From Anolis carolinensis (taxonomy: Eukaryota): a stretch of 64,000 nt of DNA. The notes under the pieces were generated by a model that did no database searches, was not told the DNA's origin, and saw only the letters and a program-made list of their open reading frames with translations. Each line of letters starts with the position of its first letter. Positions within the stretch are counted from its first letter, which is position 1. The DNA lies in the NCBI RefSeq assembly GCF_035594765.1, contig NW_026943820.1:5774647-5838646 (forward strand). Reading direction: 5' to 3'. Positions 1,025-38,500 of the stretch are shown piece by piece. A program made the position numbers and the translations under genes.

Positions 1025-8922
<7,898 letters not shown>

Positions 8923-19712: not shown

Positions 19713-19980
19713 TAATAAAATATTTATTTTGGGGGAAAATAATCCTTTGAGTCTCCTTGAAGAGGAAAAAGCAAGGAATAAATGCTACGATCACAAACCC
19801 TTTGCAAATGCGACCCCCGGGTGCTGACCCGCCACTCTGGGTAAGAAGCAAGCTGCCAGGGCTTTGCAGGGCTGGGCTTGTGGGGCTGCCTGCCCTGATT
19901 TCCCTGGGCAAACAGAGGCAATGCCAGGCAAAGGCAGGGACCCGGCTTGCTTCCCAGCCTCTCCCCAGAGAATCCAGGCA

Positions 19981-22900
19981 ATGGGGTGGCTGTGTCCGTC
20001 CCCTGCAATGGGGCAGCTGCTCCTGACCCTGGGGACCCTGAGCTGGGGGGCCGTGCCCTCGGTGACCATGCCTGGCACAGTGATGCAGGAGGAACCCAAG
20101 AGTCTACAGGGAAGAGGAGGAGGAAGCCTCATTGCAGGTCTAGGTGAGTCTAGAGCAGGCATGGGCAAACTTCAGCCCTTCAGCCCTCAAGGATCCACGG
20201 TGGCGCAATGGGTCAAGCCATTGTGCTGGCTGAACTGCTGACCTGAAGATCTGAAGTTCAGCAGTTCAAATCCACAAGATGGGGTGAGCTCCCATCTGTC
20301 AGCCCAGCTTCCCATGCAGGGGCATGGGTTAAACCTGCCTTGGGTGCTTAGGTTGTCTTCCAGTGTGACAGAAGAGAGTCGGGCTTGATGGCTTCTGGGG
20401 TTTCTTCTACACTGTCATAAAAAATACAGTAGAGTCTCACTTATCCAAGCTAAACGGGCCGGCAAAAGCTTGGATAAGCGAATATCTTGGATATTACGGA
20501 GAGATTAAAGAAAAGCTTATTAAACATCAAATTAGGTTATGATTTTACAAATTAAGTACCAAAACATCATGTTATACAACAAATTTGACAGAAAAGCAGT
20601 TCAATACGTAGGAATGTTATGTTGTAATTACTGTATTTACAAATTTAGCACCAAAATATCACGATATATTGAAAACATTGACTACAAAAATGGCTTGGAT
20701 AATCCAGAAACTTGGATAAGTGAGGCTTGGATAAGTGAGACTCTACTGTACACATAACCTGCTTTGACCTGGTTTATATGGCAGTGAAGACTCATATAAT
20801 CCAATTGAAAGCAGATAATAATGTGGATTATCTGCTTTGATCATGGCAATGCCGCAGTGGCGCAATGGCTTAAACCCTTATGTCGGCTGAACTGCTGAAC
20901 TGGAGATCTGAAGGTCAGCAATTAGAATCCGTGAGACAGGGTGAGCTCCCGTCTGTCAGCCCCAGCTTCCCATGCGAGGACATGAGAGAAATAATAGTAA
21001 TAATACTTTATTTTTCTATCCCGCCACCATCTCCTGGGGACCTGGCAGAGGCTGGGCTGCAGGGCAGAAACCCCAGGGAGGGGAAAAGAAGGGGAGTTCA
21101 TGGGGCTCAGGAGGAATGCTGGGGTGGGCTGCAAGCTCCTCACAACCTCTCTCCCTGTTTGCATACAGACATGGGGGCCATCTGGGAGGCCTTGCAAGAT
21201 GTGGCCCCTGGGAACTGGCAGCCGGTGAGTGAGGACCACCCACTGCCACTTGCAACCTGGCCAGGAAAGGGGAGGCCAAGAGTCCAGTGGGTGGGGGATG
21301 CCTTGGTCCTCCCCTGAAGTGGGACCCCCACCACCACCACCACCACAACATAGGACCTCTGTAGCCCAACAACCTTTACGCTGTGCTCCTCTCTCTCTTT
21401 CTTTCTGCAGGAGCTGGTGGAGCGGCTGGCCCTTCCGGTGCCTGAGGACAGCCCCTGGGGTGCCTCCCAGATGGTAGTGGTGGCACTGGGCTCTTGGGGG
21501 GGGGGGGTGGACAGGGGAACTGAGCCCCAAAGCCAGAAGATGTGAGGAGTCCTACTCACATGGAGCTCCTTCTTTAAAGGAACCCCCAGTGGTGGGTGGG
21601 CAGGGGGTGCAGCAGGAGGCATAGTGGGCATTGAGTCTTTGTGTCCTGCTGATGAAGGTGTATTGGGAAAATACTTGTATTGGAAACTATATATTGAATG
21701 TAATCATATTAGAAATAGGAACAGGAAAATATGTAATCACCAGCAGATTGTGTGCACATAGCCCCAAAAATACACTCTACCTAGCAAATAACCGTCTTCC
21801 CATAAGCAGAGACCAAAGTTCACCCTAAGTGCCAGAAACATATGTCAAATGTCAACAAGAATAGATAAAGCTCCATGTTAATGGACAAAAGACAAGGCTT
21901 TTGGGATGTCAAGATAAGACCTGGCACCATGTAGGAGTGCTAATGGCTCCTTAAAAGCTAGAATAAGGGGGAATTCCTCAATTAATGGGAACCCCTGAAA
22001 GCCTAGATAGGAATTCCTTCGATAAGGCCTAATGGAGGGTCAGAGGTCTCGAAAGTAGCCTATATTTTAGGAAAATGCAAAAGTAGCTTTTAGTAAAGTG
22101 CAAAGTAAGACTTTTTTGACACTAATTGGTGATGGATAATGCCTATATGACGTAGGTAGATGGAGGGAAAATGGTATAAAAGAACCTGTGTTTCTTTGTT
22201 CTGTACCTTCACTTTCCTGATTACAGGAGAAGGTCCTTCTTATTGCTTATTCTCTCTGGCCAGAGAGAATAAACGTCTTTTTCTACAGCAACTGGAACTC
22301 TCTTTGTCTCATTACCTCAAACCTTTGTCCCTGGCTGGCTCACCAAAATGAAATGGCAGACAAAGGTTTGAGGTAATGAGACAAAGAGAGTTCCGGTTGC
22401 TGTAGAAAAAGACAGTTATTCTCAGTGGCCAGAGAGAATAAACATCTTTTTTTACAGCAACCGGAACTCTCTTTGTCTCATTATCTCAAACCTTTGTCTG
22501 CCATTTCACTGCCAGGCAGAGGAGCTGAGGCTGTTCCAGGCGGTGAGTGAGCATCTCTTGCAATGGAGGAATCCAAGGCTCCAGGCCTCCTCCACTCCTC
22601 ACCTGCGCCTCCTTGGCCTCCTAGCCATCCATGGCAGCAGCCGCCTACTCCAGGCCAGCCTCGGACCCTGCTTGCCAGGAGTCACAGGTAGTGCCCAGGT
22701 GAGGAGGCCATGTGCAGGGGTTGGGAGAGAAAAATGAGGGCCCTGGGGAGCACCTTGATGAGACAAACTGATGGAGGGGGTTTCTGCTTCTGATGCAGGA
22801 ACAACAGCAGTGGCGCAAGTCTCTGGTGGGATCCCTGATGGGAATTCTCAGGAGCTTGGAGGCAGCTTTGCAAAGTGGACTGCGAGATGGCAGGACCGCC

Positions 22901-25900
22901 TTTGCCCTGGAGGCCCCTCTCCTGAGCCTCTCCCTGCGCAGGTACCAAACAAGGAACCCAGGAAGGGAGGAGAATGTTTGGGGGGGGGGGAGAGTCTTCA
23001 GCTGGAGATCCAGTCACAGCCCTGGGCTCACCATCACCACTGTGCTCTGCCCCTCCATGGTTCCCAGTGCTTGATGACTGGCCCTTGCTCTCTCCCGTGC
23101 AGGTTGACCTTCTCTCAACTGGGTGCTGCCGAGCTGTCCTTCTCCAGCAGCCCCTGGGCAGCCAGGGTGGTCTTGCCAGAGCTGAGTGCCTTAGGCTCCT
23201 TCCTGCCGCCAGAGGCCCATGTCGATGTGCAGGTCAGAGAGGCACCCTTACAGAAGGAAAGGGAAAGGGTCTCAGTCCCAGTCAGTGGAGCAGAAATTGA
23301 CCCCATCTCCACTTCCAAAGGTCTGCTGCTGGGACTCCCAACAGAACTGCAGCTAAGCGATTCCTTCCGTCTTTGTCTTTCTTCATCCAGATGGGGAGCT
23401 TCTTGGGGAGCCCCTTCTTCCCCTCAGATCCCTCCACACAGAGGGAGGTCACAGGCACCGTGGCTGAACTGGACCTTCGTGTCAGGGGCACCGAGGTTCG
23501 GGTCAGCAACCTGACTGCTCCTGTCCAGGTATGGCCAGGCCCATTGTGGGTGGGGCGGTTCACCAGGGCCCTTGCCTGGGGTGGAGAAGGAGGCAGGAGA
23601 CCCCACAGGGTCTGGAAGAGACAGGCTGGAGGAGGCAGGGGCCAATTTTGGCCCTCTCTCTGGGTGTTTTGAACTTCAAATCTCACAATTCCTAAGGCTG
23701 GAAGGACCAAAGTTGACCCATGCCTGAGTTGGAAGCAGGTCCAGAGGCACTGTGGTTGGCAGCCCCTCTGACTCTTCTTGCCACACTCTGGCTCTAATGC
23801 TCTTCCCAGTTTGACCACAGGCTCCCCATTCAGGGCAAGGGCCTAGCGGACGCTGGGAGCCTCACTTTGGTGGTCTCTTTCTATCCCCGACAGATCTTCC
23901 TGCCCCAGACGTCGCCTGCTGTGGACTGGGGCCCTGTTCTTTCTGTCTCTCCTGGGGAATCCCTGCTGCTGACAGTGAAAGGCTGGTGGGGAGGGGGCTC
24001 CCTGGGTGTCCACGCTCATACACGCCCCCCACAGCCCTTGGGACTTTTCCTCCTGCAGTGGAACCAGCAACGTCTACAGCCCAGTGCTGTTGATTCAGGT
24101 ATAGGGATGGGGCACTGGAGCCAGGAGAGCCGCTGTCTCAGACCAAAACCCGGCCCAACTACAGTGCGGATATCTGTGAGGTAGGTGGGAGGGTGGAATC
24201 ATGAATAAGAAGAAATACTGAACACTAACCCTGTTGGTGCCCCCTTGCAGATGGCTACTCCTGGCTTGTGGGGCTGGAGGTACTCCGGGCCCATGGGGGA
24301 GCCCCCCGTTTTCTGCTGGTGCCGCTGAACCTCTCTGCAGAGGCCCCTCCAGTTTCCATGCGCCTCAGGGCCTATGGAGTCCAGTGCCTCTCCTGGGACC
24401 CCTCCAGTGCCCAGTGGAGAGCGGAGGGCTGCAAGGTGAGTCTCTTGCTCTCCCAGAACGGCCAAACCAGCTCCTCTGGGGAGAGACATTCCTTGCGTAT
24501 AACTGTGTCCCCTATCCCTCAAAATAGAAGAGATAGACTCTGTCCTATATCTCATTTCCCACTTTGAAACACTTTCCAGCTGCCGGAGAGGGTCTCTTTA
24601 TCAGGCTGAAGGTGGGTGGGTGGTCCTCCCTTTGCACCATGTGCAACCCACCTGGGCAGGGGCTCCTCTAGTGCTGCCCTTCCCATGGGTGCTATGCCGC
24701 CGCTTCTTCCTCCCCTTTGCAGGTGGGGCCCCAGAGCCGCCAGGAACCAGGAGGCCACTGCCTCTGCAGCCACCTCTCTGTCTTCGGAGCCTCCTTCTGG
24801 GTGGCACCTGTCCAAATGGACCTTGTGTGCACAGCAGAGTACTTTGGGCGTGTGAGCCAGAACCCTGTCCTGGCCATCCTGCTGGGTGTTCTCTATGGAC
24901 TATTCCTTGTAGGCCTGACCTGGGCCTGCTGGATGGACACACGAGAGCCGGCCCAGGTAGGGGGCTGGTATAGGGTAGGAGAAAAGGGCAAGGGGTGCAG
25001 GTGGCACGGTACATGACCCCAGGGCTGCATGGGCCCAAGACTGCCTTGACCTCCTCTGTGGCAGCTACAGTGTGGCTAGCATCCCACTACACCAGACATG
25101 GGCCAACTTCAACCCTCCCTCCAGGTGTTTTGGACTTCAACTCTGTTAGGAATTCCTAACAGAGTTGAACTCCAAAAGACTTGGAGGAAGGGCCGGAATT
25201 GGCCCTTGTTTGCACTATGCCCACCAAAGTCCTTTGCCTGCTTTCCCATTGCCCTGAAAACATCCCTAAACCTTTCTCAGGTGGGAGCAGCTCTGCTGCC
25301 GGAGGAGGACCCCTGTGCCCAGTATGTCTACCTGCTCTCCGTCACCCTGCAGGAGCCCCCCGGACCCGGCAACAGCCCCAGGGTGAGAGTTGCGCATTTT
25401 CCCAGGAGGGCTACGTGGAAGGGGTTCCTCAGTCGGATGCGCCACTCATTCTGCCCCATTTCCTTGCCCACTGCCAGCTCTCCATCAGCCTCCAGGGATC
25501 CTTTGGCACCAGCAAGCCCCGCCGCCTTCCTTGTCAAGGCACTTTCCTGCTGCGTGAGCCCTGTCCACTGGGGGAGCTGCAGGGCATCTGGCTGTGGCAA
25601 GAGAGCCTTGGAGTCCCACAGAGGCCCCGGTCAGTCCTCCTGGCACCTAGATGGAGAGTACAGGGGGGGGGGGGGGCAGGGCAGGGGCATCCAGTGTCTC
25701 CAAAAGAATAGGACCGGGTGGAGATGTATCCTGATTCAAATCTGGCAACTTGTGAGAGTTGTCAGAGCAGCAGACACATTGCAGCTGGAAGAAGGAAGCC
25801 TTTATACTTCTTTTGGGGTGCTGGACAGGAGACTCCTCCTTCCCTTAAGCCTTGGCCCACTTATCTGGGGCTTTGGGAGCTGGGAGCAACCATACTCCCA

Positions 25901-28600
25901 CAGTTTCAAGCAGGGGCTCCTTCCCCAAATGGCACCCCATGGGAAGCACTCGCCCTCCTCTACCTATCATTGTCTTCTTCCCAGGTATGTCTCGGGTATT
26001 GCAGTGTGGGACCTTCCACAGAGGAGGCACTTCCGCTTCCCTTGCAATGCCTGGCTTGCTGCAAGAGAAGATGGGCTGAGCACCCCCCAACACTTCCCAA
26101 CAGCCCCCCCGGAAGAGCCATTCTGGTAGGTGGGATGTGAAGGCACCTGGATGTGGCCTCTCCTTGGATCCAGGACAGGATACAGTGAGACCCACATAGG
26201 AGGTGGACTCAGCTCCCATCAACAAAGGGATTGAGTGCCGGGGTTCCCCTGGAGAAGGGGACCTGCCTCCTATGCTCCCTGCCCCCCTGCAAGCCCTCTA
26301 TTTTGCTCACTCGGGGTGCCTTTCTTACAGGCCTGTCTTCCGGCAAAGGGCCCTGAGCGGCCTCTGGGAGGAGCACACTGTGCTGCTGGTCCTGCGCCCA
26401 CCCCCGCGCAGCCCCTTCACCCGGGCCCAGCGCCTCTCCTGTGCTTGGAGCCTCCTCCTGTGCTCTGCCCTCATCAGCCTCATGTTCTGGGAGTCTCCTC
26501 AGGGAGACAGCACTCCACTCCTCTTGGATGCCGGTAAGAGAGATGGAAGGAGAGGGAAGCAGCCTTGAAGGGGAGAAGTTTGGGGAGGACTAGGTGCCCC
26601 CAAAAGGAAGGAGGAAGGCTCCCTGAATGTAGGGAAAGGGAAGGAAAGGGGCAGAATGAAGGATCCATCGCCTTCCTCATTTGTCGCACAGGCAGCGTCT
26701 TCTCTCTCTCCTGGAAGGACGTCGTTATTGGAGTCCAGAGCGCCCTCCTCGCCTTCCCCATCAACTTCCTCGTGATCTTCATCTTCCAGCGCTCCAAGAC
26801 TTGCAAAAGGAGACGGGGTCCCGGCCAGGGTCCCCCTACCATGCCCAGCGCCCCCAATGATCTCACCAGTCTGCAGGCCGTTGTGCTTGAGGTGGGTACC
26901 TGAGTGAGAGGGCAGAGCTGTGGGGCAGGGCCAGGATCCACTGCATCTATGCTTGCACCCACCCTTCAACTGTGAGGATTCCTTGAGCGCCTTAACAAAT
27001 GCAGCCCCCACCCACCCATTAGGTGTTTCCTTTGGTGACCCCACTGTGCAGAGGCAAAACTTGCTCTGGGGTACCTCTCCTGCTCCTCAGTGGGTTTTCT
27101 TGGCCGTATTCCTATACCATCATCTTCCAGAGTAGGGCAGATGCACAACGGCTGGCCTTGTGGGTCTGGAGTCCCAGTGCCCTTGGCACCCTCTTCCCTC
27201 CTGCCACCAACTTCTCTGCCTCTCTCTCATAGCACCTGCGTTCCGCTGTGGAGGTTCTGAGCAGAGGGCCGGAGCAGTCAGAGCCCCGTCAGGCGCCCCT
27301 TCCTCCCACTCTGGGCTTTGAGGAGCTACTGCAGTTGCTGCACCATTTTATCCTGGGTGGTGGCAGAGGTGGGACAGCAAATGGAACTGCCCGCACCTCA
27401 TCTGCATGCCATGCGCCTGAGGCTCCTGCTTACTCCTCTGACTGTGCACAACCCAGCATCCTGCCTGGCACAGCAGGGCCCACCACTGCCCCCTCCTCAC
27501 TACATGAGACCTACTGCACCCGCTTCCTCCTCCTGAAGCTGCAGCGTGTGGAGCGGCTCCTGGAAGAAGTAGGAGCAGGGTGCCCTACAGAGGAAGGTGC
27601 CCTGGCCCTGCAACGGGTGCAAGAGATGGGGGCTGCCCTGGCCAAGCGCCTCCCAACTGCCCAGCCATCCTGCCGCAAGTAAGTAGCCATGCCAACAGTT
27701 GGGCTTGATGGACCGGTGGCAGTCATGGTGAGCGTGCTCCAAGGACCTAACCCTCCTCCTCCTTTCTCAGCAGATGGTGTCAGTGGAGATTGCCCTGGTG
27801 GGGATCCCTGGTGGGCTGGGCCCTCTTACTCTCTCTCAATGCAGCCTCCGCCTTCTTCATCCTGCTGTATGGCTTCCATTATGGGAAGGAGAGCACCGAG
27901 CGCTGGCTGGTGTCCACAGCCATCTCCTTAGGACAGAGCCTACTGGTCCTTCAGCCCTTCAAGGTATCCTCTACGCCCCTCCGTGTTCTGATGTATGCAG
28001 GAGGGGGCAGCACCTTCAAGATAGGAAGTGGAAGCCTGGGGCCACCTGCCATTTTCCCTTTCTGGCATCTACTGTCAGGGAGCCCAGGGGACTGGGGGCT
28101 TCTCACCACTTCTGCAAAGCTGCTCTCTCCCCACACACAATCCACAGGTGGTCTGCTTTGCCATCTTCTTTGCACTGGTCTTGAAGAAAGCGGAAGAGGA
28201 AGAACCTGCTGTGGAGGAGTCCCTTGACCAGCTGGAAGAAAGGTGAGAAGGAGGCACCCCTTTGCACACCTGTGGAAGGAGAGATGGGTGGACAGGCAGA
28301 AAATGAGGAAGCCTCCAGTGGGGGAAGCCTTCTGCCAGGACCTCCCTCCAAAAGCGTCCTTAGGAAAACAGATGAAGCTGGAGGCCTGCTTCCGATTGGG
28401 GAAGTGTCTCCTGTGGAGGCCAATCTCTCCTTCCTATGTCCATGCAAAGAGTGGATGGAGCAATGAAAGAGGGGAGAGGGAGGCACTTCTCTGGGAATTG
28501 GGGCCGGAGCAGAGGCACGACTGGGGCACTGGAAGTGGCTCCCCACCTGAACCTCTTCTTCTGCCTCCTTTGTGATTACAGGCTGGGCTCTTTCCAGTGA
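19981..28600 (+). CDS. Polycystin-1-family (PKD1L2/PKD1L3-like) paralog lacking the channel domain: signal peptide - GAIN/GPS - TM1 - degenerate PLAT - TM2-5; about 1016 aa
   Basis: 19 phase-compatible GT-AG exons: 19981-20143, 21169-21224, 21411-21473, 22516-22698, 22799-22941, 23103-23232, 23391-23528, 23894-24098, 24251-24435, 24723-24956, 25281-25382, 25478-25629, 25985-26125, 26331-26533, 26692-26891, 27233-27678, 27771-27963, 28148-28242, 28582-28600 (3051 nt, no internal stop). GPS CLSWDPSSAQWRAEGCK/VGPQS...CLCSHL|SVFGAS; FPCNAWLA; SPFTRAQRLSC; FPINFLVIFIF; LPWW...FFILLYGFHYG...QPFKV. The first three exons and the last exon are the least certain. Confidence 0.8.
20427..20748. mobile_element. 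Tc1/mariner MITE family 1 copy
   Basis: Both TIRs present, TA flanks. Confidence 0.9.
21650..22508 (+). mobile_element. Solo LTR (retroviral/LTR retrotransposon) with rearranged 3' end
   Basis: TGA...TCA ends, 4-bp TSD CTGC (21646-21649, 22509-22512), TATAAA 22175-22180, AATAAA 22268 and 22437. Confidence 0.8.
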
Positions 28601-28883
28601 AGAGGACTGCCACCTTCTCAGGACCCCAGTCTCTAGACCTGAGCCCACCAAGCGCCTCCCCTCCTTGCCGGAGCCCATTCATCCATTGCCCCCCCTCCAC
28701 ACCCTCCTTGCAGCCGACTTCCACCTCCCTCTGCCCTGAAGAGGCCTCTGGACTCTCAGAATCAATAGGATAGGATAGCACAGAGTGCAGGGACTGATAA
28801 AGCACCTCCACCTTGTGACTTGGTCTCCATTGGCTTGCAGGGCTTGAAGTGGATAAAAGATAAAAGACACTTGCCTATCCACC

Positions 28884-29170: not shown

Positions 29171-29474
29171 AATAATAAATTCTTTCACCAAAGGATGTTC
29201 ACTTGTCTATTTGTTCTTTACCAATTACTTTGTAGTAGCGAGGAAGGCAGTCTCATTCCTGTCCACGCTCTCCCCATTGTGCACATGCTGTGTTGCCCTT
29301 CCTGGCTGGACGGGTGTGGACAGTGGCACACCCTGTTTGGTAAACAGACAGCACTCCCATCTGGTTGCTGCACCTGCTCATCCTCTAGGTGTGCCCCCCT
29401 TCAAAGGACACCAGCCTTTTGTCTGCTATTCTTTTTATGACTTCCCCAATTTTTCAGAGGTGGGTAAGGGAAGG

Positions 29475-29539: not shown

Positions 29540-32500
29540 ATGTGGCTGGCCCTCCTGCTGGGAATGCTTGCCTCCTCCTGCGGGGCACTGGACACCCCTT
29601 GCCTCCCGACTGGGGGAAAGACCTGCCATCGCCTGCTGTGGACCCCCTGGCCCCTCCCTGCCACCTGGTCCTGGTGCTGGCGCCGTGGGGGCCGCATCCT
29701 CCCTCTATGGGGCCAGCAAGCAGAAGAGGCCTTCGGGAGCCAAGTGGCAGGCGGGGGCAGGATCAGGCCCCAAGAACAAGAGCAGCATCCACCGGGTGAG
29801 GGGTCCCCGGAGCTCTGGGATACCCCACTGGTGGAGGGGAGGGGGCTTTCAAAATCATTGTCCCCCCAAAATACAAATCGTTTCTGGGGAACAAGAGCAC
29901 TGGGCAACTCCCACTGTTCCAAGGAGGGTTTCCCAGGCCCTGATGGGGGTGGGGGGCAATGGGCAGCCAGCCTGGAAAAAGGGCAGTCAGACATCTCTTC
30001 CTCTCACAGCTGGGGCCTCTTATTCCTCCTCCTCCTCCTCCATCGGGTGCCAGGCTATCATCCGGTTTGGGGACCGCTTATGGGGCAGGAGGGCAACCTG
30101 CTCGCAGAAGCGCTTCTTCATCTGCCAGACGGGTGAGCCCACTTCTTCACACCGCTCCTCTAGACCCACCTCCATGGGGCCAAGGTCTGGGGGGCAGGTG
30201 GGGCATAGGCCCTGACTGCATCGGGACCCAAAAGGGCAAGGGAGGAGGGATGGGCCTTTGACCTCTCCTGATGGAGAGACACTTTTGAAAGGGGCCCCTG
30301 CTGAGCTCTGCCCCCTGCACCCTAACCCTCTCCTCAGGACCTCCCAGGATACGGAGAGAAGTCTCCAACCCCCAGCGAAGGGTAAGTACGTTTTGGAGAA
30401 AGTGCTGAGATGGAATCAGAGGAGGGGGTACCCACTGCACCCACCCCTCATTTGTCTCTCTATCCATCTCTCGATTCCTGCTGATCTCTTTGGTTGAGGG
30501 GCCCTGGTGACCCTGCCCCCTCCCTCTTACCAGCGTTCAAGCTGTCTGAGACTGAGCTGCAGACTGAGACCCCCATGGAGGAGAGCCACACCTGAGCCCG
30601 ACATCCTGACCGTGGGGCCAACAAGCCCCCCTCCAGGCACACAGGAGGGGACAACAGAGGGAGGCTCGTGGCCCAGTGCCAGCCAGGCTCCGGACGGCAC
30701 TCAAGCCCTCCCTTCCACGAGGAAAGAGCTCCACACCACCAGGAAGGAAATCCCCAGCCAGCAGCCTGAAGCGGATCCCCACTGGCCTTCAGGTGCCCCC
30801 CGGGAAGCCTATATCAACCAGACAGAGCCCAGCACCCATCCAGTCATCCAGGTCCAGACACACCAATTAGAAACATCCTCTTCAGCTGCCACAGGGGAAC
30901 CACTGCCGAGAGGAACAAGCAGGTCATCCTTGGAGGAGACAGAAAGCCCAGACCCGGGACCCTCCACCCTCAGTCCTCAAGACCCCTCCCCTGAGGAACA
31001 GGCACAGGTAGTGAGAAAGGGACAGGGGCGTCACCCACCATGTCAGGAGGAGGCTGAGACTGGCCTCTGAGTGGGAGGAGATCCCTCATCCACCCCCCAA
31101 CTGATCCTCCTTCTCCCCCCCCCCCTCCCCACAGGCCCTGGAGAGAGAACTGGGCCAGTTCAGCGAGTCGGTGGCTGAGGAGTCCTCACGGGGAAAAGCC
31201 CACCAGCTGAAGGACCTGACCAGCTCCCCTTCTCTGCTGTCAGAGGCAGCCCAGGTACCAGACAAGGATGGAGGATGGCCCCTTTATGGCTCCCCCCTCT
31301 CTGCATCTGCTAGGAGATGACTCACAGCTTCCTTGGGGAGGAAGCTCTAGATCAGTGATTCCCAAAGTGGGCACCCTGGTGGGCACTGCAGTGATCCAGG
31401 GGGGCGGTGATGGCACCTATTAGGACATGGGGACGGGGCCAGGGGGCAGGGCCTCTTCCCAAGTGCCGGAGACAGGGCTGAGCATCTGAGGCACCTGTTA
31501 GGACATAGGGGACGGAGCTAGAGGAGTGGGTGTGGCTTCTTCCCAAGAGCCCAAGACAGGGCTGAGCCTCTATACCTCTCCTGAGAGGCCTTTTAGGACT
31601 AAAGGGCAGGGCTAGGGGTGGGGGCGGGGCCTCTTCCCAAGAGTGCGAGACAGGGCGGAGCCTCTGTATGCCTCCCCTGAGGGTTTTACATTTTTACTCA
31701 GCATTCACTTACATGTACATGCATTCATCCTCATACATACATCACCATTTCTCCATTCTTCCTCCATGAAGAACATCTCTTAGGCCAGACTGCTTCCTTG
31801 CAAATCTGCCAATGGACAGTTCCAAAATCCTAAAACGCCAAAAAGAACATGACTCCAAAACACACTCTTTTCTCTTCCCTCGTACAAAAGAGGCAAGGGA
31901 CCAGACTGTGTTCCATTGCAGATCGGCCACTACCAAATACATACACTATCTCTGTCCTTCCCATGGAGCAGAGCATAGTGGGTGACCAACTTGCTGTCTA
32001 TCACAATTTTTGAATTGTAATAAAGTCACTTATATAGCAATATTTCTTCTGATATTGTCCCAGAGTTGTAAATTACTGACAGGTTGTTTGGCCAGCCTGA
32101 AACATTATGGCTTCATCTCAGTTTCCTGGCAGATGTCGACTCTGCATAATTGGTGTTGATTCTCAAGAAGGAATCTTGTAAACATTTCCTTAATAGAGCC
32201 ATTGTCTCTGATTAATGTAAACACGTTGTTTTCCCCAAAAAGTTCATCAAGTCAGCAATGTAAACAGTTAAGAAATTTGTCACAGTTCTTATCAGCACCT
32301 TTTAATTAAGTTCAGCAAGCAGGCAGTTAGTCATTGCAGGCCTTAAGCTTAGATTTGTGTCTTCACACTTTATCACTGTTACTCATTTCCATGATATAGC
32401 ACTTTATGAAACCTGTCCCCGCTGGTTCGCTTTTAATTGCTCTGATTTTATCTACTCGTATTTTAATGTATTATCCATTATATTATTTTGTGTATTGTTG

Positions 32501-35500
32501 AAATGTTTTAAGTTTTGTCAAATATGTTGTGTCGTTGTTCGGGCTTGTCCCTGTTGTGAGCCGCCCCGAGTCCCTTTGGGGAGATGGGGCGGGATATAAA
32601 AATAAAGTTTATTATATTATGTTATTATTATTATTATTATTCAGCCAAATTAGGCCCCATCCATACAACTAATTCATACCCATATATCATATTTCTGTGG
32701 CACCTGCCTTAGCAATGAGTCGCCTAAGTAACTGTCTTCCCTGCAGGCCTCTGCCAGCCGGGCCCTCCTATCCCTGAGCACTCAGCTCCTTAGAAAGCGA
32801 AAGAAACCTCGCAAAGTTGGAGTCTCCGCTGCCTCTGACCGCCCTGTGGGCAACCCCTGGCAAGACCTCTTTCAGACTCTGGGCAACCTCCTCCAGGCCA
32901 TGGATAACTCTGACGGGGGACACAAAGAGGTGCTGAGCTGGAGTTTGGGGCAATGCAGGGTGGAAAGGGGAAGCAAGGCAACTGGGCATCCTGAGGGGGA
33001 TTGGACTCCCTCCATGGCCCCCCTGTCTCTCCTTGGCATTAGCCCCCGGCCTCTGTTTTCCAGGGAGAGGTGGCCCTGGAAGATACGCTGGCCTCCCTGC
33101 CCCTTATCCAGAGTGGGCTCCTGATTGGCTGCCCCGGAACACAGACGACGACTGTGGCCTCTCCAGCACTCAGCACCACACTCAGCAGGTGCTTCTTGGG
33201 GTGGGGATGGGTCAGGGGAAGGGCACGCAATGGCACCCAAATGACTCTTTTCCTCCCCCCTCCGTCCCTCCCTTTAGAGCCACCGCGACCTCCCTGCCCC
33301 AGAGCTCCTTCGAGGTACCTGAGCCGAGGCCCGTGAGTGTCACCTTCCCCTCCAGCCCAGCGTTGGAGACCCTGATGGGACCAGAGAGCTACGTCCAGGT
33401 CCGGGTAAGTACAGACCCCCCCCCCCCCAATCAAGATTCCATGCCTTCAACTGCTGGCAATACACTCCATTTTCTGTCCCCTCCTTCCCCCACTTTCTCC
33501 CTTTGCCGTCAAATTATTCAAGTTGCAGCAAGTTGAGTTTAGAATTCAAAAACTCAATGAACAGACAGGGAAGAGGAAGTTGTACTTACCCAGAGTGTCA
33601 GGCGGTGGTCCAGCTCCTGTCTGGAGCACTCTTCTTCCCAGAGGTGATCCAACAATGAGGCGAATTAGGCGGTTGACTATGGCGCAGACCATGCAGGGGC
33701 GCTGTCAAGGCGGCGGTGGACGGGTGGCTGTGCCTTCTGCTGCCGCCGCCACCAGTATTCATCAGCAATTTGTTTGGGGGGGGGGGGTCGCCAAAATTCG
33801 GGAGGGGCGCCAAAATTCCGGTCGCCTACTCCCGAAAATTACATTGGGACGGCTCTGCTTCCTCCTCAATACCTTTTTCCATCTCTGCTACACTTTTCCC
33901 GGTTTCCATCTATGAAATGGAGGGTAAAGCAGCAGGGGCTGTTGGAGGGCCTCTCTTTGCTCCTTGGCCCCATGGGGAGGCATGGTTGGGGGCTGGTGGC
34001 AGGCAGGCCTCAGCATCACCCCTCCCTTGCTCTGCCCCACTCTTCTCCAGGTGGCCTCCTTCGCACTCAACCCCTTCAGGCAGTTGAACGGAAAGCCAAT
34101 CAGAAGTGTAGCCAGTGTGGCTCTGGCAGCAGAGGAGAACGAAACAGCAGAAGAGCAGGCCCTCCATGTCCAGGGCCTCACAGAGGAGATTGAGGTGGGG
34201 GTGCCGATGGAGTTCCCGTGGAGGAGCCCTTCTTGGCACAGCCGATGAAGACCAGGCAGTGGGCTGAGGGTGGGTGGATCTCCTTGAATGGAAGGGGATC
34301 GCCTGGACCCCATGATTAGAATCAAGAGCCTTCCCTGGGTGACATCTGCCCACTTTCCTCTCTTCAGATCAGAAGGGCTTTGGGGTTGAAATAGTATTCA
34401 CAATTTCCTAGTAAGGGGGTATTGTTTTATTTCTGTGCAAGCCGATTTAACCCTTTGTTCATGTTGGACAAGAGCTCACCTGCTTTGGCACCTGGGCCTT
34501 CTGGGCTTGTGCATGGTAGGGAGCAAGAAAGCGGGGAGGAGGCTTTGCTTAGAGAAGGGGGCAATGGGAGGAGAGGGGAGGGTCACCTGGGGGCTGACCT
34601 TTTCCCAGATTGTGCTTGGCGGAGAGGCGGACGGTGGAGAGGCCTCTGCCATGAGCAGCAGCATGGCTGGTTTGGGCGCTGGGCTCTTCAGCTTGGAAGT
34701 GAACATCACATCGCTGGAGGACGCCTTGTTGGTCTCTGTCAGGCCCCAGGTCCCACTGCAGATTACCCTACACCTCTTGGGACCCCCAGGATCCAAAGGA
34801 AACGGCAGTGGCAGCCTCCTCAACACCACGTTCCCTGAGGGCCAACCAGAAGAGGGTGAGATGGCAGGGGAGAAAGGGGCACTGTGGTTGGGAGGCAGGC
34901 GGAGAGGGGGCAGAGGGGCAGATGGATGCAGGCAGCAGGGGGCAGCAGAGCTGGGAGGAAGGGGGATTGTTGGTGCCGCTCTACTGTTCTTCTCCATGAC
35001 CCTCTTCTCCTGCTCCAGAGACTGCCTCTGTGTGGGTCATTCCCCCAGAGAGCCTCCGCTGTGGCCTGGGCACCTACTTCATCTCTGGAGAGGTCACCCC
35101 TGTGGCGAATGCCTCCTGGAACCTCTCAGTGGGCATCCTCAGCAGTGGGTGTTACTACTGGAACAGCCAGGACCAGGCCTGGAAAACCGACGGATGCCGG
35201 GTACGGAGTGGGGCCAGCCAGGGAGAGAAGGATAATGTGTTAGTACAGGGGGCAGGGCAGGGCAGGGTTCCATTTTCTGACATGGCCACTGCCCTTCTCT
35301 GCCCTGTCTACAGGTGGGTCCCCAGAGCTCATTGCTCCGTACCCAGTGCCTCTGCAACCACCTCAGTTTCTTTGGACGCTTCTCCCTGGTCCTGCCGCAC
35401 GTGATTGACCTCCGGCGAACGGGGCTCCTCCTGAGCAGAGTGGGTCAGAACCCAGCTGGAGTGGCCCTTCTCAGCAGCCTCTTGTTGGGCTATCTGGTTG

Positions 35501-38500
35501 CCCTCATCTGGGCCCGATGGAGGCAGAGGGCAGACGCCCGGAAGGTGAGGCCAGAGGGCCAAGCACCTCGACCCAGAGGCAGGAAATGGTCTCGGGCTTG
35601 ACACATACCATGTTGCTTTCCTTCTGCAGGTGAGGGTCCTGGCCCTAGCAGACAATGACCCTGGCGCCCAATTCCTGTATTTGGTGCAGGTCTTCACCGG
35701 CTATCGCTTTGGTGCAGGAACCTCCGCTCAGGTGTGGGAGGGAAGGAGCTCTTTCTCATGGCTGCTTTGCACCCTCAGGGACTCCCTCCTCCCTGCAGAA
35801 TTATACAAAAGCCACCTCTGCTTTGACGGATCCATACATCCCATCCCTTCTGCCTCCAGGCCGTCCTGACCCTCTATGGGGCTGAGGGACGGAGCCGCCC
35901 CCACCTGCTGCAATGCTCAGAGGCCTCCAGAGGCCTTGAGCGTGGTGGGATGGATGCCTTTCTTCTGGCCACTCGCAGACCCCTAGGAAACCTCCATGCC
36001 GCCCGCCTCTGGCACAACCAGACAGGATCCAGTCCCAGCTGGTACGTGGTGCCTAACCAAGAAGGGAAGCTGTGACAGGACCCAAGGCAGGTGCGGGGGG
36101 TGGGGGGAGCTGGGGCCGTTGGGTCTTGCAGGATGTCAGGGAACCCCTTCTTCATCTACACCCAGGTTTGTGCGCCACCTGGTTGTCCGAGACCTGAATG
36201 TGAGGAGGAGGTGGTACTTCCTGTGCAACTGCTGGTTGGCCTCAGACATGGACGATGGGCAAGTGGACAAGGTCTTTGTGGCCGCTTCACAGGAGGAGCT
36301 CCTGTCCCGACGGTAAGGACCTTTTTGCAAAGTATAAAGAAAGTCTTTGGCCATGCGCAGAAGGACTTTCTGTCACCACCTGGCCCTTGGGAGCATGGTT
36401 CCAGGTAGATTGAGCGGGGTGGCACACATCCAGAGGATTGGGAATGTATTGGGAGGTATATGTGCCTCCCTTAGTGGCCTCTCTTCCTCTTCCCCCCCCC
36501 CCCCCACTTGCAGGCACCTCTTCTGGGCTGGGCTGGTGGGAAAGCTGACACAGGAGCACCTCTGGCTCTCAGTGCTGACCTGCTCCATCTGGAGCCCCTT
36601 CACCCGGGTTCAGCGCCTCTCCTGCTGCCTTGCCCTCCTCCTCTGCTCCATGCTCATCAACATCATGTTCTGGAAGGAGGCCCCGAGGGATGACGAGCCT
36701 TCGTCGGAGGCGGGTGAGGAGCCCTCAGCCAAGGTCCTTGATCACAGGACCTTGGCTGCCCCCTCCCACACACTTCACCCTTCTGGGGGTCTGCAAGGGG
36801 TTCTCCTTGTCCCCTCCTTGTCCAGTTGTGTCTTGCAGCAGAACAAGGCCCCTGACCCCTCCCCCCTGGTCCACAGAGCCCTTTGTGGTGACGTGGAAGG
36901 AGCTGATGGTCAGTGCGCAGGTTGCCGTTCTCATGGTGCCAGTGAACCTGATGGTTGTCCATGTCTTCAAACTGGTCCACTCTCCCCTTGGGCCCCAGCA
37001 TCCTCCCAGCACCAGGCCCCCCTGTCCTCCACTGCCCGCTTCACCAGTGGACCCACTCACACACCTGCAGCAGGTGAGACACCTCCTTTGACTTCTGGAA
37101 CAGGGAAACACTTGAACTCCTGTCCTCCCTCCATGCCCTCCCTGCTTCTAGAGGTGATAATTCCCCAAAGGCCCACCTCATTATGGCTCCACTCTTTTTG
37201 CTTGAAGGGAGTCCTGCGTGTTGGCACGGTAGGGACCATAAGCCAGAAAAATAGTAAACTATTGCCTATGTAGCTTTGCCTCTACATATGTCCCTCCCTT
37301 CTTGGGGGCTGGTGCCTTTCTCCAGAAAGTTCCAAGACCAAAAGTTAGCTTGAAATCAACAAGTGAGCTCACAGGTATCACTTATGCCAAGTAGGTGTGG
37401 AAGGTGAGGAAGACCCTCAGCCATTGGTTGATTTTAGATAAGCTGAGATATACATTCTTTGTTGGCTACGCACATGTTGTGATGGACATTTGCATATTAC
37501 GGACCCATTAGAGTGGGTGCCTACGGCTGTTTGCCTTATCATCAGCTGTGATAACAATAAAAGGCTTGTTTTATTGCTCTCTTGGAATTCTCTCCTTTAC
37601 TTCCCCTCCGGGCTAGTCTCCAACAGCACCACCCTTTTGAAATCAAAAATATGAATTTCAATTAGCCATCTTTGCATTTCTTTTCCAGCAAGTGCCTGCA
37701 CTTCTTCATACAATTACAATGTATTTAGTAGCAGTGCTTTGAATCTGTTCTTAGCATCATATTAGGACCAAGCCTTTGCTGAATCTGCGGCAGGGTGAAG
37801 CTGTTTGTTTTCTCTTCTGCTTCTGAGGGACCAAATGCCTCTTTTCTCAGGAACTGATTGAGACGCTGGGTTTCCTCCTCAAGAACATCCTTTGGCAGCA
37901 CAGAGAGGCAGGTGGCTTCCCAGGGGCCCTGCAGCAGGTGCCGGAGCTGGTGGCCAGCCTCTGTGCCCTCGTCCGGTCTCACCTGCAAGCCTTGGAAGAC
38001 CCAGGAGGCCTTCTTCAGGGAAATGGAGCCGGATGCAGCCCCCTCCAGCCCAGCCCAGGCATGTGCACACACCGCCACACTTCCAGCACTGGCCTGGACC
38101 CTGGTGGCCGGGAGGATGAGCATAAGACTCCAGCCCCATGAGCTTTTGCCCTTCTCCTCATTCCAGAGAGGTCCCGCAGCCTCCATAGCTACATCTGCCT
38201 TGTGGTGAAGGACCTGGAGGCGCAGCTCCGTAACCTGGACTGGTGCAGCCTTCCAAAGCCCTACGACTACCTCCATGCTGCAGACCAGCTGCATAAGCTC
38301 TGGAAGAACCTGGAGCAGCACCTGCCACCATTTGTCGTGACAGCCACCCCCTCCGTGGGGTCCAGGTACAGATGCTAAAGGCAATGGGCTGTCCTCTGCC
38401 ACACACCTGAGTGCCTGGGGCTCTCTGCTCTGAGGGAAGACTTGGGAAGCTGTGACCCTCTTGGCGCTTGTTCCCATGGAAGGCGGTGGTGCAGCTTCCC

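What the first reader, a model, noticed from the sequence alone, without database searches (positions are those of the whole stretch)
19981..28600. Intact channel-less polycystin-1 paralog (GAIN-TM1-PLAT-TM2-5) in tandem upstream of PKD1L3
Seen: 19 exons with canonical GT-AG sites splice into an uninterrupted ORF of about 1016 aa with its own signal-peptide-like start. It has a complete GPS motif and five TM segments, then an acidic tail and a stop (…DQLEER-LGSFQ*) at the point where the S1/TOP/channel half should begin. Intron phases match the neighbouring PKD1L3 from the GAIN region to TM5, and two exon lengths are identical (183 and 102 nt), yet the proteins are very divergent. This suggests an old duplicate kept in frame rather than a fresh fragment. 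Established: the vertebrate polycystin-1 proteins (PKD1, PKD1L1-3, PKDREJ) have 11 TMs and contribute a TRP-like subunit plus a C-terminal tail to heteromers with PKD2-family channels; human has one such gene at this locus. Inference: a possibly undescribed 5-TM, adhesion-GPCR-like autoproteolytic receptor or modulator, paired with PKD1L3 and perhaps chemosensory in role.
Basis: partly seen in the sequence, partly recalled or inferred. Interest (0 to 1): 0.9.

Follow-up and report, generated by a model that had tools for sequence, protein, structure and literature searches.

The report
Channel-less polycystin-1-like gene beside PKD1L3
The lizard window holds a real, intact gene for a "half polycystin" (sensor half and five membrane helices, no channel half); public databases already list it under a wrong name, and it proves to be an ancient sister of the PKD1L3 gene rather than a fresh discovery or a decaying fragment.

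Summary
Nineteen GT-AG exons (19981-28600, + strand) splice into an open frame of 1015 aa, or 1016 aa with a NAGNAG acceptor. The product has a signal-like start, a complete GPS motif (CLCSHL|S), five hydrophobic helices, an acidic tail and a stop 26 codons after TM5. A full 11-TM PKD1L3 ortholog starts about 940 bp downstream, and DHODH lies upstream.

The window is Anolis carolinensis. RefSeq already models the last 620 aa with the same stop, named "polycystin-1-like protein 2". Proteins of about 1000 aa with GPS and PLAT but no channel domain are annotated in other lizards, frogs, a salamander, a caecilian, sturgeons, bichirs, gar and many teleosts.

A maximum-likelihood tree puts them in one clade (97/100), separate from PKD1L3 (96/97) and from true PKD1L2. 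Sturgeon, frog and lizard carry both genes in tandem, so the duplication predates the split of ray-finned and lobe-finned fishes. The fish copy was noted in 2017 as a "partial pkd1l3" remnant and set aside.

dN/dS is about 0.44 and the 19-nt terminal exon is conserved, which argues for a maintained gene. I could get no RNA evidence. Function is inferred: an autoproteolytic membrane receptor or scaffold that cannot be a pore subunit.

The parts
19981..20143 (+). Exon 1: ATG, signal-peptide-like start (MGWLCPSPAMGQLLLTLGTLSWGA...)
   Evidence: Donor is GT. It is homologous to the N-terminus of the Sceloporus 1002-aa model. No C-type lectin follows, unlike in agamids, frogs and fish.
21169..21224 (+). 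Exon 2 (56 nt)
   Evidence: AG/GT sites, phase 1. tblastn match to Pogona P0003.
21411..21473 (+). Exon 3 (63 nt)
   Evidence: AG/GT sites. Aligned with orthologs.
22516..22698 (+). Exon 4 (183 nt), start of the helical part of the GAIN-like region
   Evidence: AG/GT sites. P0001, P0003 and P0004 cover the whole 183 nt. My first 27-nt version was wrong.
22799..22941 (+). Exon 5 (143 nt)
   Evidence: AG/GT sites. Aligned with orthologs.
23103..23232 (+). Exon 6 (130 nt)
   Evidence: AG/GT sites. Orthologs 53-56% identical.
23391..23528 (+). Exon 7 (138 nt)
   Evidence: AG/GT sites. Matched by orthologs.
23894..24098 (+). Exon 8 (205 nt), GAIN beta part
   Evidence: AG/GT sites. Matched by orthologs.
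24251..24435 (+). Exon 9 (185 nt), first half of the GPS motif (C..W..W..C)
   Evidence: Pfam GPS E = 0.065 on the exon alone. RefSeq model P0188 starts inside this exon. Same phase as gene B exon 35019-35200.
24723..24956 (+). Exon 10 (234 nt): GPS core CLCSHL|S at 24759-24779, stalk, TM1 at 24867-24923
   Evidence: Cys, His and Leu are invariant in alignment A1. Hydropathy peak 2.33. Begins at the same residue (VGPQS) as gene B exon 35314-.
25281..25382 (+). Exon 11 (102 nt): start of the PLAT-like domain
   Evidence: Same length and phase as gene B exon 35630-35731. No Pfam hit on the exon alone.
25478..25629 (+). Exon 12 (152 nt): PLAT-like, 30 nt shorter than in gene B
   Evidence: Lizard copies lack about 9-10 residues of PLAT.
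25985..26125 (+). Exon 13 (141 nt): end of the PLAT-like domain
   Evidence: PLAT reaches the Pfam cut-off in Sceloporus (32.6 bits) and scores 78-85 bits in fish orthologs.
26331..26533 (+). Exon 14 (203 nt): TM2 at 26434-26490, conserved PPxRSPFTRxQRxSC motif
   Evidence: Hits polycystin-1 chain 6a70_B at E = 0.0044. Finds 123 family members among 1.84 billion proteins.
26692..26891 (+). Exon 15 (200 nt): TM3 at 26721-26795
   Evidence: Hydropathy. Same phase as gene B exon 36877-37073.
27233..27678 (+). Exon 16 (446 nt): TM3-TM4 loop, with 81 in-frame nt where lacertids have a 92-nt intron
   Evidence: Lacerta has two exons here, of 145 and 220 nt. The alignment shows a 27-aa insert. RefSeq P0188 keeps the insert.
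27774..27963 (+). Exon 17 (190 nt; alternative acceptor at 27771): LPWW motif, TM4 at 27808-27864, first part of TM5 from 27940
   Evidence: 70-75% identical to other lizards. NAGNAG acceptor.
28148..28242 (+). Exon 18 (95 nt): rest of TM5 (28148-28180) and acidic tail KKAEEEEPAVEESLDQLEE
   Evidence: The acidic cluster is conserved from fish to lizards. The exon ends in phase 2, whereas the homologous gene B exon ends in phase 1.
28582..28600 (+). Exon 19 (19 nt): LGSFQ plus TGA stop
   Evidence: A 19-nt terminal exon with a near-identical acceptor context (tgtgattRcagGCTG.GCTC..TCCAGTGA) is present in Podarcis and Lacerta. RefSeq P0188 and Sceloporus P0141 end at the same place.
29174..29179 (+). 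Only AATAAA between the stop and gene B: candidate polyadenylation signal
   Evidence: Its use is not shown, because no RNA data were available.
29540..43343 (+). Neighbour, gene B: the full PKD1L3 ortholog, with signal peptide, C-lectin, S/T-rich stretch, GAIN/GPS, TM1, PLAT, TM2-5, TM6-11 and pore
   Evidence: tblastn with Phrynocephalus and Phrynosoma PKD1L3. Lies in the PKD1L3 clade, 80% identical to Phrynosoma.

Best explanation
This is a bona fide, conserved protein-coding gene of Anolis carolinensis. It is the squamate member of an old vertebrate gene family that arose by tandem, probably partial, duplication of the ancestor of PKD1L3, before ray-finned and lobe-finned fishes split.

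Shown:
- It encodes only the N-terminal module of a polycystin-1-like protein. The order is signal peptide, GAIN-like ectodomain with a cleavage-competent GPS (HL|S) and a conserved stalk, TM1, a PLAT-like cytosolic loop (degenerate in lizards), TM2-5 and a short acidic cytosolic tail.
- It has no TM6-11, TOP or pore domain and no coiled coil, so it cannot take the place of a channel subunit in a PKD2-type tetramer.

Inferred:
- It is self-cleaved at the GPS like other family members.
- It works as a non-pore membrane receptor or scaffold. The ectodomain and stalk would act on the outside; the PLAT loop and the acidic cluster would act in lipid binding, sorting or partner binding on the inside.
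- It works either alone or as a trans-acting partner or competitor of PKD1L3/PKD2L-type complexes.

In squamates the gene evolves fast. Iguanians have lost the lectin domain, PLAT is shortened, and an intron has been taken into the reading frame. It is still under purifying selection.
For: Gene model:
- 19 GT-AG exons give an open frame of 1015/1016 codons.
- RefSeq P0188 (Anolis carolinensis, 620 aa) matches residues 397-1015 at 99.7% identity and has the same stop.
- Sceloporus P0141 (1002 aa) aligns from residue 50 to the last residue at 64% identity.

Family:
- Exon 14 alone finds about 1000-aa relatives.
- NCBI lists such models in lizards, many frogs, Lissotriton, Microcaecilia, Huso/Acipenser, bichirs, gar and dozens of teleosts. 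Their precomputed Pfam domains are GPS, PLAT and sometimes Lectin_C, with no PKD_channel.
- My own Pfam scan of 9 orthologs gives GPS and/or PLAT, plus one weak Lectin_C, and no channel domain.
- A profile of the family hits polycystin-1 6a70_B at E = 2.7e-53 over TM1-PLAT-TM3. It also hits LOX PLAT domains, C-lectins and adhesion-GPCR GPS/GAIN regions.
- An AF2 model of the Sceloporus ortholog (pLDDT 71) shows GAIN-like, PLAT and helical membrane parts. Foldseek hits LOX PLAT, latrophilin and BAI3 GAIN domains, and PC1 8zkt.

Phylogeny (careful ML tree):
- The channel-less clade has support 97/100 and a species-tree-like topology.
- The PKD1L3 clade, which includes the sturgeon copy, has 96/97.
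- True PKD1L2 is separate (99/96).

Tandem pairs:
- Podarcis has separate A and PKD1L3 genes 1.5 kb apart.
- Phrynocephalus has DHODH-A-B.
- Pelobates and Acipenser carry both halves within fused models.

Constraint:
- dN/dS between Podarcis and Lacerta is 0.44-0.45, falling to 0 over TM4-5.
- In four public datasets there are 8 synonymous and 10 nonsynonymous variants, no stop, and every indel is intronic.
- The terminal 19-nt exon and its acceptor are conserved between iguanian and lacertid lizards.

Against a chimeric transcript: joining exon 18 to the gene B exon after TM5 is out of frame.
Against: - The runs that hold the locus gave contigs colinear with the genome, with introns and no splice joints.
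- RefSeq models only the 3' 620 aa in Anolis, so exons 1-8 rest on homology with Sceloporus and on open frames.
- The PLAT region gets no Pfam hit exon by exon in Anolis and is below or near the cut-off in other lizards.
- dN/dS of 0.2-0.45 and pN/pS of about 0.4 are high for a membrane receptor. The squamate stem branch is long (0.91 changes per site).
- Some public models fuse it to channel exons (Amia P0017).
- Function is wholly inferred. Nothing here shows cleavage, localisation or partners.
Confidence: 0.8

Rival explanations
1. It is a decaying remnant or pseudogene. On this reading, a partial copy of PKD1L3 is being lost, as England et al. 2017 proposed for the fish 'partial pkd1l3', and the open frame in Anolis is residual.
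For: - It lacks the one domain shared by all accepted PKD proteins.
- In Anolis the lectin domain is gone, PLAT is degenerate and an ex-intron is read through.
- dN/dS is 0.44 and variants run 10 nonsynonymous to 8 synonymous.
- Variant density in exons is not lower than in introns.
- No RNA evidence was obtained.
Against: - A frame of about 1000 codons with the same architecture and the same end is kept in lineages that split more than 400 My ago.
- dN/dS is well below 1: about 97 nonsynonymous against 69 synonymous differences where neutrality predicts about 3:1. This is my estimate.
- The TM4-5 region has dN = 0 between two lacertids.
- All 18 introns keep GT-AG.
- No stop or exonic indel appears in four datasets.
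- The terminal micro-exon and its acceptor are conserved.
Confidence: 0.1
2. It is not a gene of its own but the 5' part of a longer transcript. On this reading, exon 18 splices onward into the channel exons of the downstream gene to give an 11-TM protein, or A and B are read as one giant protein as in some public models.
For: - Fused models exist for Phrynocephalus (2765 aa), Pelobates cultripes (2401 aa) and Acipenser ruthenus (2675 aa).
- An Amia model joins A-type TM1-5 to a channel half.
- The gap between the genes is under 1 kb.
Against: - Exon 18 ends in phase 2 and the gene B exon after TM5 starts in phase 1, so the join is out of frame.
- Gene B has its own signal peptide, lectin, GAIN and TM1-5.
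- After five helices the chain is cytosolic, so a fused gene B ectodomain would lie on the wrong side of the membrane (inference from topology).
- The Phrynocephalus fusion reads through non-homologous intron and intergenic sequence.
- NCBI and ENA models in Podarcis, Lacerta, Sceloporus, Pogona, Anolis, many frogs and many fishes stop after the acidic tail.
- England et al. found no channel sequence at the teleost loci.
Confidence: 0.05
3. It is a lineage-specific, recent duplicate of PKD1L3 that happens to resemble the short fish genes. In that case truncation would have happened independently in fish, frogs and lizards.
For: - The gene lies next to PKD1L3 with identical intron phases.
- The branching order of the A, PKD1L3 and chondrichthyan clades is unresolved (66/41).
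Against: - The A clade includes fish, amphibian and lizard members with 97/100 support, and its topology follows the species tree.
- Anolis A scores 412-426 bits against bichir short forms but only 174 bits against a lizard PKD1L3.
- The shared KK-acidic tail straight after TM5 is absent from PKD1L3.
- Sturgeon has both types.
Confidence: 0.03

Closest known systems
PKD1L3 (polycystin-1-like 3), the downstream neighbour and sister gene
   Same: - It sits at the same locus between DHODH and ZNF821.
- It has the same domain order from the ectodomain to TM5.
- Intron phases are identical from the GPS exon to the TM3 exon.
- Both have the GPS motif CxCxHL(S/T)xFG.
- Both have the conserved TM2 motif and a WW/W motif before TM4.
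   Different: - The finding has no TM6-11, TOP domain or pore.
- It ends 26 codons after TM5 with an acidic tail and its own 19-nt stop exon.
- Identity is only about 27%.
- It falls in a separate clade.
'Partial pkd1l3' of zebrafish, other teleosts and spotted gar (England et al. 2017, PMC5318412)
   Same: - The paper describes a protein of about 1083 aa with lectin, GPS and PLAT, no polycystin-cation-channel domain, lying next to dhodh.
- Teleost, gar, Amia, bichir and sturgeon proteins of this build fall in one clade with the Anolis gene.
   Different: - The paper treated it as a PKD1L3 remnant on its way to loss and did not analyse it further.
- Here it coexists with a full PKD1L3 in lizards, frogs and sturgeon, so it is a paralog, not the PKD1L3 ortholog.
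- The zebrafish sequence itself was not in my tree. Cyprinid relatives were in the hit list.
PKD1L2, the name RefSeq gives these models
   Same: It belongs to the same PKD1L2/PKD1L3 subfamily and shares the lectin, GPS, PLAT and TM1-5 homology.
   Different: True PKD1L2 (Peromyscus, Triplophysa, Electrophorus) forms its own clade (99/96) outside the group of A, PKD1L3 and the chondrichthyan sequences. It has 11 TMs with a channel domain. The RefSeq name is a best-hit label.
Sea urchin REJ proteins with fewer than 11 TMs (Gunaratne et al. 2007, PMC1934368)
   Same: These are PKD1-family members that keep lectin, REJ, GPS or PLAT parts but lack the cation-channel domain. Only 4 of the 10 SpREJ proteins have one, and their TM counts run from 1 to 11.
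   Different: They are an independent echinoderm radiation with REJ domains and different TM numbers, so the resemblance is not orthology.
Adhesion GPCRs
   Same: Both have a GAIN-like domain with a GPS autoproteolysis motif and a stalk directly before the first helix.
   Different: The membrane part is five helices homologous to polycystin-1 TM1-5 with a PLAT loop. It is not a secretin-like 7TM bundle.

Membership tests
Polycystin-1 (PKD1-like) family | GAIN/GPS autoproteolysis motif directly before TM1 | tested here: met
   - The motif C..W..W..C..CLCSHL|SVFG is present, and its Cys, Trp, His and Leu positions are invariant in 32 relatives.
- Pfam GPS is weak on exon 9 alone and scores 20-42 bits in orthologs.
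- The family profile hits adhesion-GPCR GPS/GAIN regions, and Foldseek hits GAIN domains.
- Cleavage itself was not tested.
Polycystin-1 (PKD1-like) family | PLAT/LH2 domain in the first cytosolic loop | tested here: inconclusive
   - There is no Pfam hit on Anolis exons 11-13 taken singly.
- The closest ortholog, Sceloporus, reaches 32.6 bits against a cut-off of 23. Lacertids get no hit. Frogs score 42-54 bits and fish 78-85 bits.
- The alignment shows a loss of 9-10 residues in lizards.
- The joined Anolis protein was not scanned.
Polycystin-1 (PKD1-like) family | TM1-5 module homologous to polycystin-1 | tested here: met
   - Exon 14 matches 6a70_B at E = 0.0044.
- The family profile matches 6a70_B at E = 2.7e-53 over TM1-PLAT-TM3.
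- There are five hydropathy peaks.
Polycystin-1 (PKD1-like) family | Eleven TMs with a C-terminal TRP-like channel half (PKD_channel, Polycystin_dom) and a coiled-coil tail | tested here: not met
   - The stop comes 26 codons after TM5.
- No PKD_channel or Polycystin_dom is found in 9 orthologs or in the precomputed Pfam of the short-form hits.
- The PDB profile match does not extend into the channel half.
PKD1L3 orthologs | Groups with PKD1L3 of other species in a tree | tested here: not met
   Gene A lies in a separate clade (97/100). Gene B of the same window is the PKD1L3 ortholog (96/97, 80% identical to Phrynosoma). No mammalian PKD1L3 was in the tree.
PKD1L3 orthologs | Position next to DHODH | tested here: met
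   DHODH exons lie on the minus strand at about 12.4-14.3 kb of the window. DHO_dh lies upstream in Phrynocephalus. Genes A and B share this feature, so it does not tell them apart.
PKD1L2 orthologs (RefSeq name) | Groups with mammalian and teleost PKD1L2 | tested here: not met
   The PKD1L2 clade (Peromyscus, Triplophysa, Electrophorus) is separate, with support 99/96.
Ray-finned-fish 'partial pkd1l3' (England 2017) | About 1000-1100 aa, lectin/GPS/PLAT, no channel domain, beside dhodh | tested here: met
   Architecture and synteny match. Fish proteins of this build are in the same clade. Anolis lacks the lectin domain. The zebrafish protein itself was not fetched.
Adhesion GPCRs | Secretin-like seven-helix bundle after the GAIN domain | tested here: not met
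   The gene has five helices with a PLAT loop, homologous to polycystin-1. Only the GPS/GAIN part matches adhesion GPCRs.

The most novel reading that the evidence does not exclude
The channel-less protein would be a functional stand-alone 'polycystin-1 N-terminal module', conserved for over 400 My. After GPS cleavage, its stalk and five-helix/PLAT unit would signal or traffic on their own, or would dock in trans onto PKD1L3/PKD2L1-type channels to tune them. That would make it a natural separation of the receptor function of polycystin-1 from its pore function. Its loss in mammals, and perhaps in turtles and archosaurs, would explain why it was overlooked.
Probability: 0.3. Interest if true: 0.75.

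Novelty: new variant of a known kind. Interest (0 to 1): 0.55.

Why it matters
**For nomenclature and family history.** Vertebrate polycystin-1-like proteins are described as 11-TM proteins that supply one subunit of a PKD2-type channel. This gene shows that many vertebrates (ray-finned fishes, amphibians, squamates) keep a second gene type. It encodes only the GAIN-TM1-PLAT-TM2-5 half.
- It corrects two labels: RefSeq's 'PKD1L2' and the literature's 'partial pkd1l3 being lost'.
- It places the duplication that separated this gene from PKD1L3 before the origin of bony vertebrates.

**For polycystin biology.** It offers a natural test of what the N-terminal membrane module, the GPS cleavage and the PLAT loop do without a pore. 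That question is hard to isolate in PKD1 itself.

**Limits.** The gene models already exist, mammals seem to lack it, and no function or expression is known.

Tried and rejected
**Steps that gave little or failed**
- Pfam exon by exon gave almost nothing: GPS at E = 0.065 and no PLAT. Single exons are too short.
- My first model had exon 4 as 27 nt and exon 11 as 101 nt. I corrected them to 183 and 102.
- I first set the gene B exon at 35314 to 234 nt. The donor is at 35545, so it is 231 nt (and reading).
- Two homologous-protein searches, with P0004 and with alignment A2, returned only 8 hits each. Low-complexity words filled the candidate list. Restricting the words to residues 400-760 of a frog ortholog worked.
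- The look-up of encoding contigs had no record for Sceloporus P0141 or Pogona P0140, so dN/dS for the nearest relative of Anolis could not be computed.
- RNA evidence: no listed holder is on record as RNA. The four runs I laid gave genome-colinear contigs with introns and no exon-exon joints. In X10 some pieces coincide with exons 14 and 17 and the 3' UTR, but it also holds intron 10 and lacks exon 16. Nothing can be concluded from this.
- A DNA pattern for the terminal exon was mistyped (one N too many) and found nothing. The comparison was done in a script instead.
- I did not find the terminal micro-exon in the Phrynocephalus locus with simple patterns.
- I found no in-frame GT-AG intron that would remove the 81-nt insert of exon 16, from reading the sequence.
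- The search of earlier findings gave nothing.

**Not done, by rule**
- It was not handed to the database, family or fold tools. Those were run on single exons by reference or on orthologs' ids.

Full report
**1. What is in the sequence**

Reading 19700-29400 and listing stop-free stretches let me rebuild the gene model independently. After two corrections it has 19 exons on the + strand, from ATG 19981 to TGA 28598-28600. Exon 4 is 183 nt, not the 27 nt I first took. Exon 11 is 102 nt.

All 18 introns are GT-AG, and the CDS is 3048 nt, or 1015 codons.

The product has these features:
- a signal-like start;
- a long ectodomain;
- the GPS core CLCSHL|SVFG (24759-24779), preceded by the C..W..W..C pattern;
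- five hydrophobic segments at aa 471-489, 667-685, 710-734, 927-945 and 971-989;
- a tail reading KKAEEEEPAVEESLDQLEER-LGSFQ*.

The only AATAAA before the next gene is at 29174.

The joined protein was assembled only inside scripts from window coordinates. It was not handed to the search or fold tools, which were given single exons by reference or orthologs' ids.

**2. Surroundings**

A tblastn of the model against the window finds a second, diverged copy of the GPS-to-TM5 region at 35.0-38.9 kb. Guide proteins show this is a complete gene (gene B) on the same strand. It has:
- ATG at about 29540, a signal peptide and a C-type lectin;
- an S/T/P-rich stretch;
- GAIN/GPS, TM1, PLAT and TM2-5;
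- TM6-11 with the TOP domain and pore, ending at about 43343.

Upstream on the minus strand lie DHODH exons (about 12.4-14.3 kb) and DHX38-like exons (about 1.2-1.9 kb). Downstream is a ZNF821-like frame at 55.6-57.0 kb. From my own knowledge, this is the neighbourhood of human PKD1L3 at 16q22.

Intron phases of the two genes are the same at every junction I curated from the GPS exon to the TM3 exon (1,0,0,0,2,2,1,0). Only the 102-nt exon has the same length in both. The other pairs differ by multiples of three.

**3. Identity**

Exon 14 alone hits polycystin-1 in the PDB. Against 1.84 billion proteins it gives 123 hits. The best hits fall into two groups.
- Proteins of about 940-1084 aa: Pogona, Podarcis, plaice, Erpetoichthys and Rhinoderma.
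- Two very long proteins, from Phrynocephalus (2765 aa) and Pelobates (2401 aa). These match twice and are fusions of an A-type and a B-type gene.

All carry automatic names such as 'polycystin-1-like protein 2'.

A later search returned RefSeq P0188, 'polycystin-1-like protein 2 [Anolis carolinensis]', 620 aa. It equals residues 397-1015 of my model at 99.7% identity, and the single difference is the NAGNAG choice. So the window is green anole, and the 3' two thirds of the gene, including the terminal micro-exon, are already annotated. The 5' third (exons 1-8) is supported by the 1002-aa Sceloporus model, which aligns from residue 50 to the last residue at 64% identity, and by the alignment.

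**4. The family**

A search with the conserved core of a frog ortholog lists models of about 1000 aa whose precomputed Pfam domains are GPS, PLAT and sometimes Lectin_C, never PKD_channel. They come from:
- at least 14 anuran genera;
- Lissotriton and Microcaecilia;
- Huso and Acipenser, bichir, gar and Amia;
- dozens of teleosts.

No turtle, crocodilian, bird or mammal short form is among the 120 rows shown. The bird and mammal rows are full-length PKD1L2 or PKD1L3, apart from two partial bird models without a channel domain that match only about 29% of the query. Only 120 of 298 hits were shown, and lizard copies are too diverged to appear, so this is not proof of absence.

My own Pfam scan of nine orthologs gives GPS and/or PLAT, with a weak Lectin_C in plaice, and no channel domain. 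PLAT scores fall from 78-85 bits in fish to 42-54 in frogs, 22-33 in iguanians and agamids, and nothing in lacertids.

A profile of 14 members hits polycystin-1 6a70_B at E = 2.7e-53 over TM1-PLAT-TM3. It also hits C-lectins, lipoxygenase PLAT domains and adhesion-GPCR GPS/GAIN regions, and nothing in the channel half.

An AlphaFold2 model of the Sceloporus ortholog has mean pLDDT 71. It shows a helical-plus-beta GAIN-like ectodomain, TM1, a beta-sandwich, then helices. Foldseek returns PLAT domains, latrophilin and BAI3 GAIN domains, and PC1 8zkt.

**5. Phylogeny and age**

I cut the GPS-to-TM5 region from 40 sequences, splitting the fused models:
- A-type from lizards, frogs, sturgeon, bichirs, Amia, Albula and two teleosts;
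- B-type/PKD1L3 from lizards, a newt, frogs and sturgeon;
- PKD1L2 from a rodent and teleosts;
- two rays, a lamprey and six invertebrate outgroups.

The careful IQ-TREE run gives these results:
- The A-type clade has 97/100 support (ultrafast bootstrap / SH-aLRT), and its topology follows the species tree.
- The PKD1L3 clade, including the sturgeon B copy, has 96/97.
- The rays form their own clade.
- These three groups sit together, sister to true PKD1L2 (65/96), and the order among the three is unresolved.
- Anolis A pairs with Sceloporus (71% identity in this region). Anolis B pairs with Phrynosoma PKD1L3 (80%).

The sturgeon model P0166 contains an A-type unit ending in the acidic tail, followed by a complete B-type unit. 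The tandem pair is therefore at least as old as bony vertebrates.

Teleosts and gar seem to have kept only A. England et al. found no channel sequence at the locus. From my own knowledge, mammals have kept only B.

Mammalian PKD1L3, PKD1, PKD1L1 and PKDREJ were not in the tree.

**6. Prior knowledge**

England et al. 2017 (PMC5318412) describe a zebrafish sequence of 1083 aa with lectin, GPS and PLAT next to dhodh. They report similar sequences in other teleosts and in gar. [quoted passage not shown]

A 2024 catshark paper names two extra chondrichthyan genes pkd1L4.1 and pkd1L4.2, lying outside the L2 and L3 clades. Their relation to this family is open.

Sea urchin REJ proteins show that channel-less PKD1-family members exist elsewhere.

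I found no paper that recognises the tetrapod gene or its coexistence with PKD1L3. The search covers open-access text only.

**7. Is it maintained?**

I mapped the Podarcis lilfordi and Lacerta agilis proteins exactly onto their loci. They have 20 and 21 exons, and the last exon is 19 nt in both, as in Anolis.

The acceptor context and the exon itself are nearly identical between lacertids and the anole: tgtgatt[a/g]cagGCTG[G/T]GCTC..TCCAGTGA.

dN/dS values:

| Comparison | dN/dS |
|---|---|
| Podarcis vs Lacerta, whole gene | 0.44-0.45 |
| Same pair, N-terminal 150 codons | 0.87 |
| Same pair, codons 601-750 | 0.17 |
| Same pair, TM4-5 | 0 |
| Anolis vs lacertids (dS saturated) | 0.2-0.4 |

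In Podarcis the A gene and a 1767-aa PKD_channel gene are called separately, 1.5 kb apart. In Phrynocephalus, DHODH lies just upstream.

Variants seen in four public datasets of the same species are 8 synonymous and 10 nonsynonymous, with no stop, and all indels are intronic. That gives pN/pS of roughly 0.4 by my estimate.

This is weak to moderate purifying selection, not neutrality. The rate in squamates is clearly raised, with a stem branch of 0.91.

**8. The 3' end and the chimera question**

No RNA evidence could be had. None of the runs that hold the locus is on record as RNA. The four I laid gave contigs colinear with the genome across introns, without exon-exon joints.

The case for a stop after TM5 therefore rests on four points:
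- the conserved terminal exon;
- the same end in independent public models of five lizards;
- the shared KK-acidic tail in fish, frogs and lizards;
- frame logic. Exon 18 ends in phase 2, whereas the gene B exon after its TM5 starts in phase 1, so a homologous join reads out of frame.

Topology adds a further argument. After five helices the chain is cytosolic, so a read-through into gene B's lectin/GAIN ectodomain, as in the fused models, would put it on the wrong side of the membrane (inference).

**9. How it most likely works**

Shown: the protein keeps the GAIN/GPS, the stalk, TM1-5 and, outside lizards, a good PLAT. It lacks everything that makes a polycystin-1-like protein a channel subunit.

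Inferred from established knowledge of polycystin-1 and adhesion GPCRs:
- It undergoes autoproteolysis at HL|S, with the N-terminal fragment staying attached.
- The stalk may act as a tethered ligand on the helix bundle.
- The PLAT loop and the acidic cluster face the cytosol, for lipid binding, sorting or partner binding.
- It cannot line a pore. It may act alone or in trans on PKD1L3/PKD2L-type complexes.

Which of these holds is unknown. I give the identity and architecture about 0.8-0.85, and any specific function much less.

**10. Verdict**

The gene is annotated under a misleading name, and its fish ortholog was dismissed as a remnant.

The new elements are its status as a separate ancient clade, its tandem coexistence with PKD1L3 in tetrapods and sturgeon, and the evidence for constraint. 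Interest is moderate.

Noticed in passing
window 29540-43343 (+): This is the complete PKD1L3 ortholog. It has a signal peptide, a C-type lectin (29546-30137), an S/T/P-rich mucin-like stretch (about 30500-31070), the GPS motif CLCNHLSFFG (from 35314), PLAT, 11 TMs and a pore/S6 region (42545-42972). It is 80% identical to Phrynosoma PKD1L3 over the GPS-TM5 region.
   Followed up: partly
window 1230-1880 (-), 12420-14300 (-), 55655-57002 (+): DHX38-like and DHODH exons lie upstream on the minus strand, and a ZNF821-like open frame lies downstream. Synteny with the human PKD1L3 region is therefore conserved.
   Followed up: partly
window 28960-29130 and 25100-25299: These are two very high-copy repeats, with summed contig depth of 1e4 to 1e6 in all four runs. 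The first is an inverted-repeat element between the stop of gene A and the ATG of gene B, just before the only AATAAA. The second lies in intron 10.
   Followed up: no
window 27233-27678: Exon 16 of the anole corresponds to two exons (145 + 220 nt) and a 92-nt intron in Lacerta and Podarcis. The anole keeps 81 in-frame, stop-free nt there (a 27-aa insert), and RefSeq P0188 keeps them too. This looks like an intron taken into the reading frame.
   Followed up: partly
window 27771/27774: Exon 17 has a NAGNAG tandem acceptor. The RefSeq model uses 27771 (..SCRNRWCQW.., 1016 aa). Using 27774 gives 1015 aa.
   Followed up: yes
P0001, P0002, P0166, P0017 (public proteins); L003:3001-44237: Public models fuse the two tandem genes in Phrynocephalus forsythii, Pelobates cultripes and Acipenser ruthenus. 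An Amia calva model joins A-type TM1-5 to a channel half. These are likely annotation artefacts and would mislead domain counts for the family.
   Followed up: partly
window 20180-20300 and 20850-20960: Two tRNA-like SINE copies (..ggtggcgcaatgg..ctgaactgctgac..) lie in intron 1 of gene A, with further dispersed repeats in introns 1 and 3.
   Followed up: no
window 25655-25668: A poly-G run in intron 12 varies in length between public datasets, with 3 or 4 bases missing.
   Followed up: no
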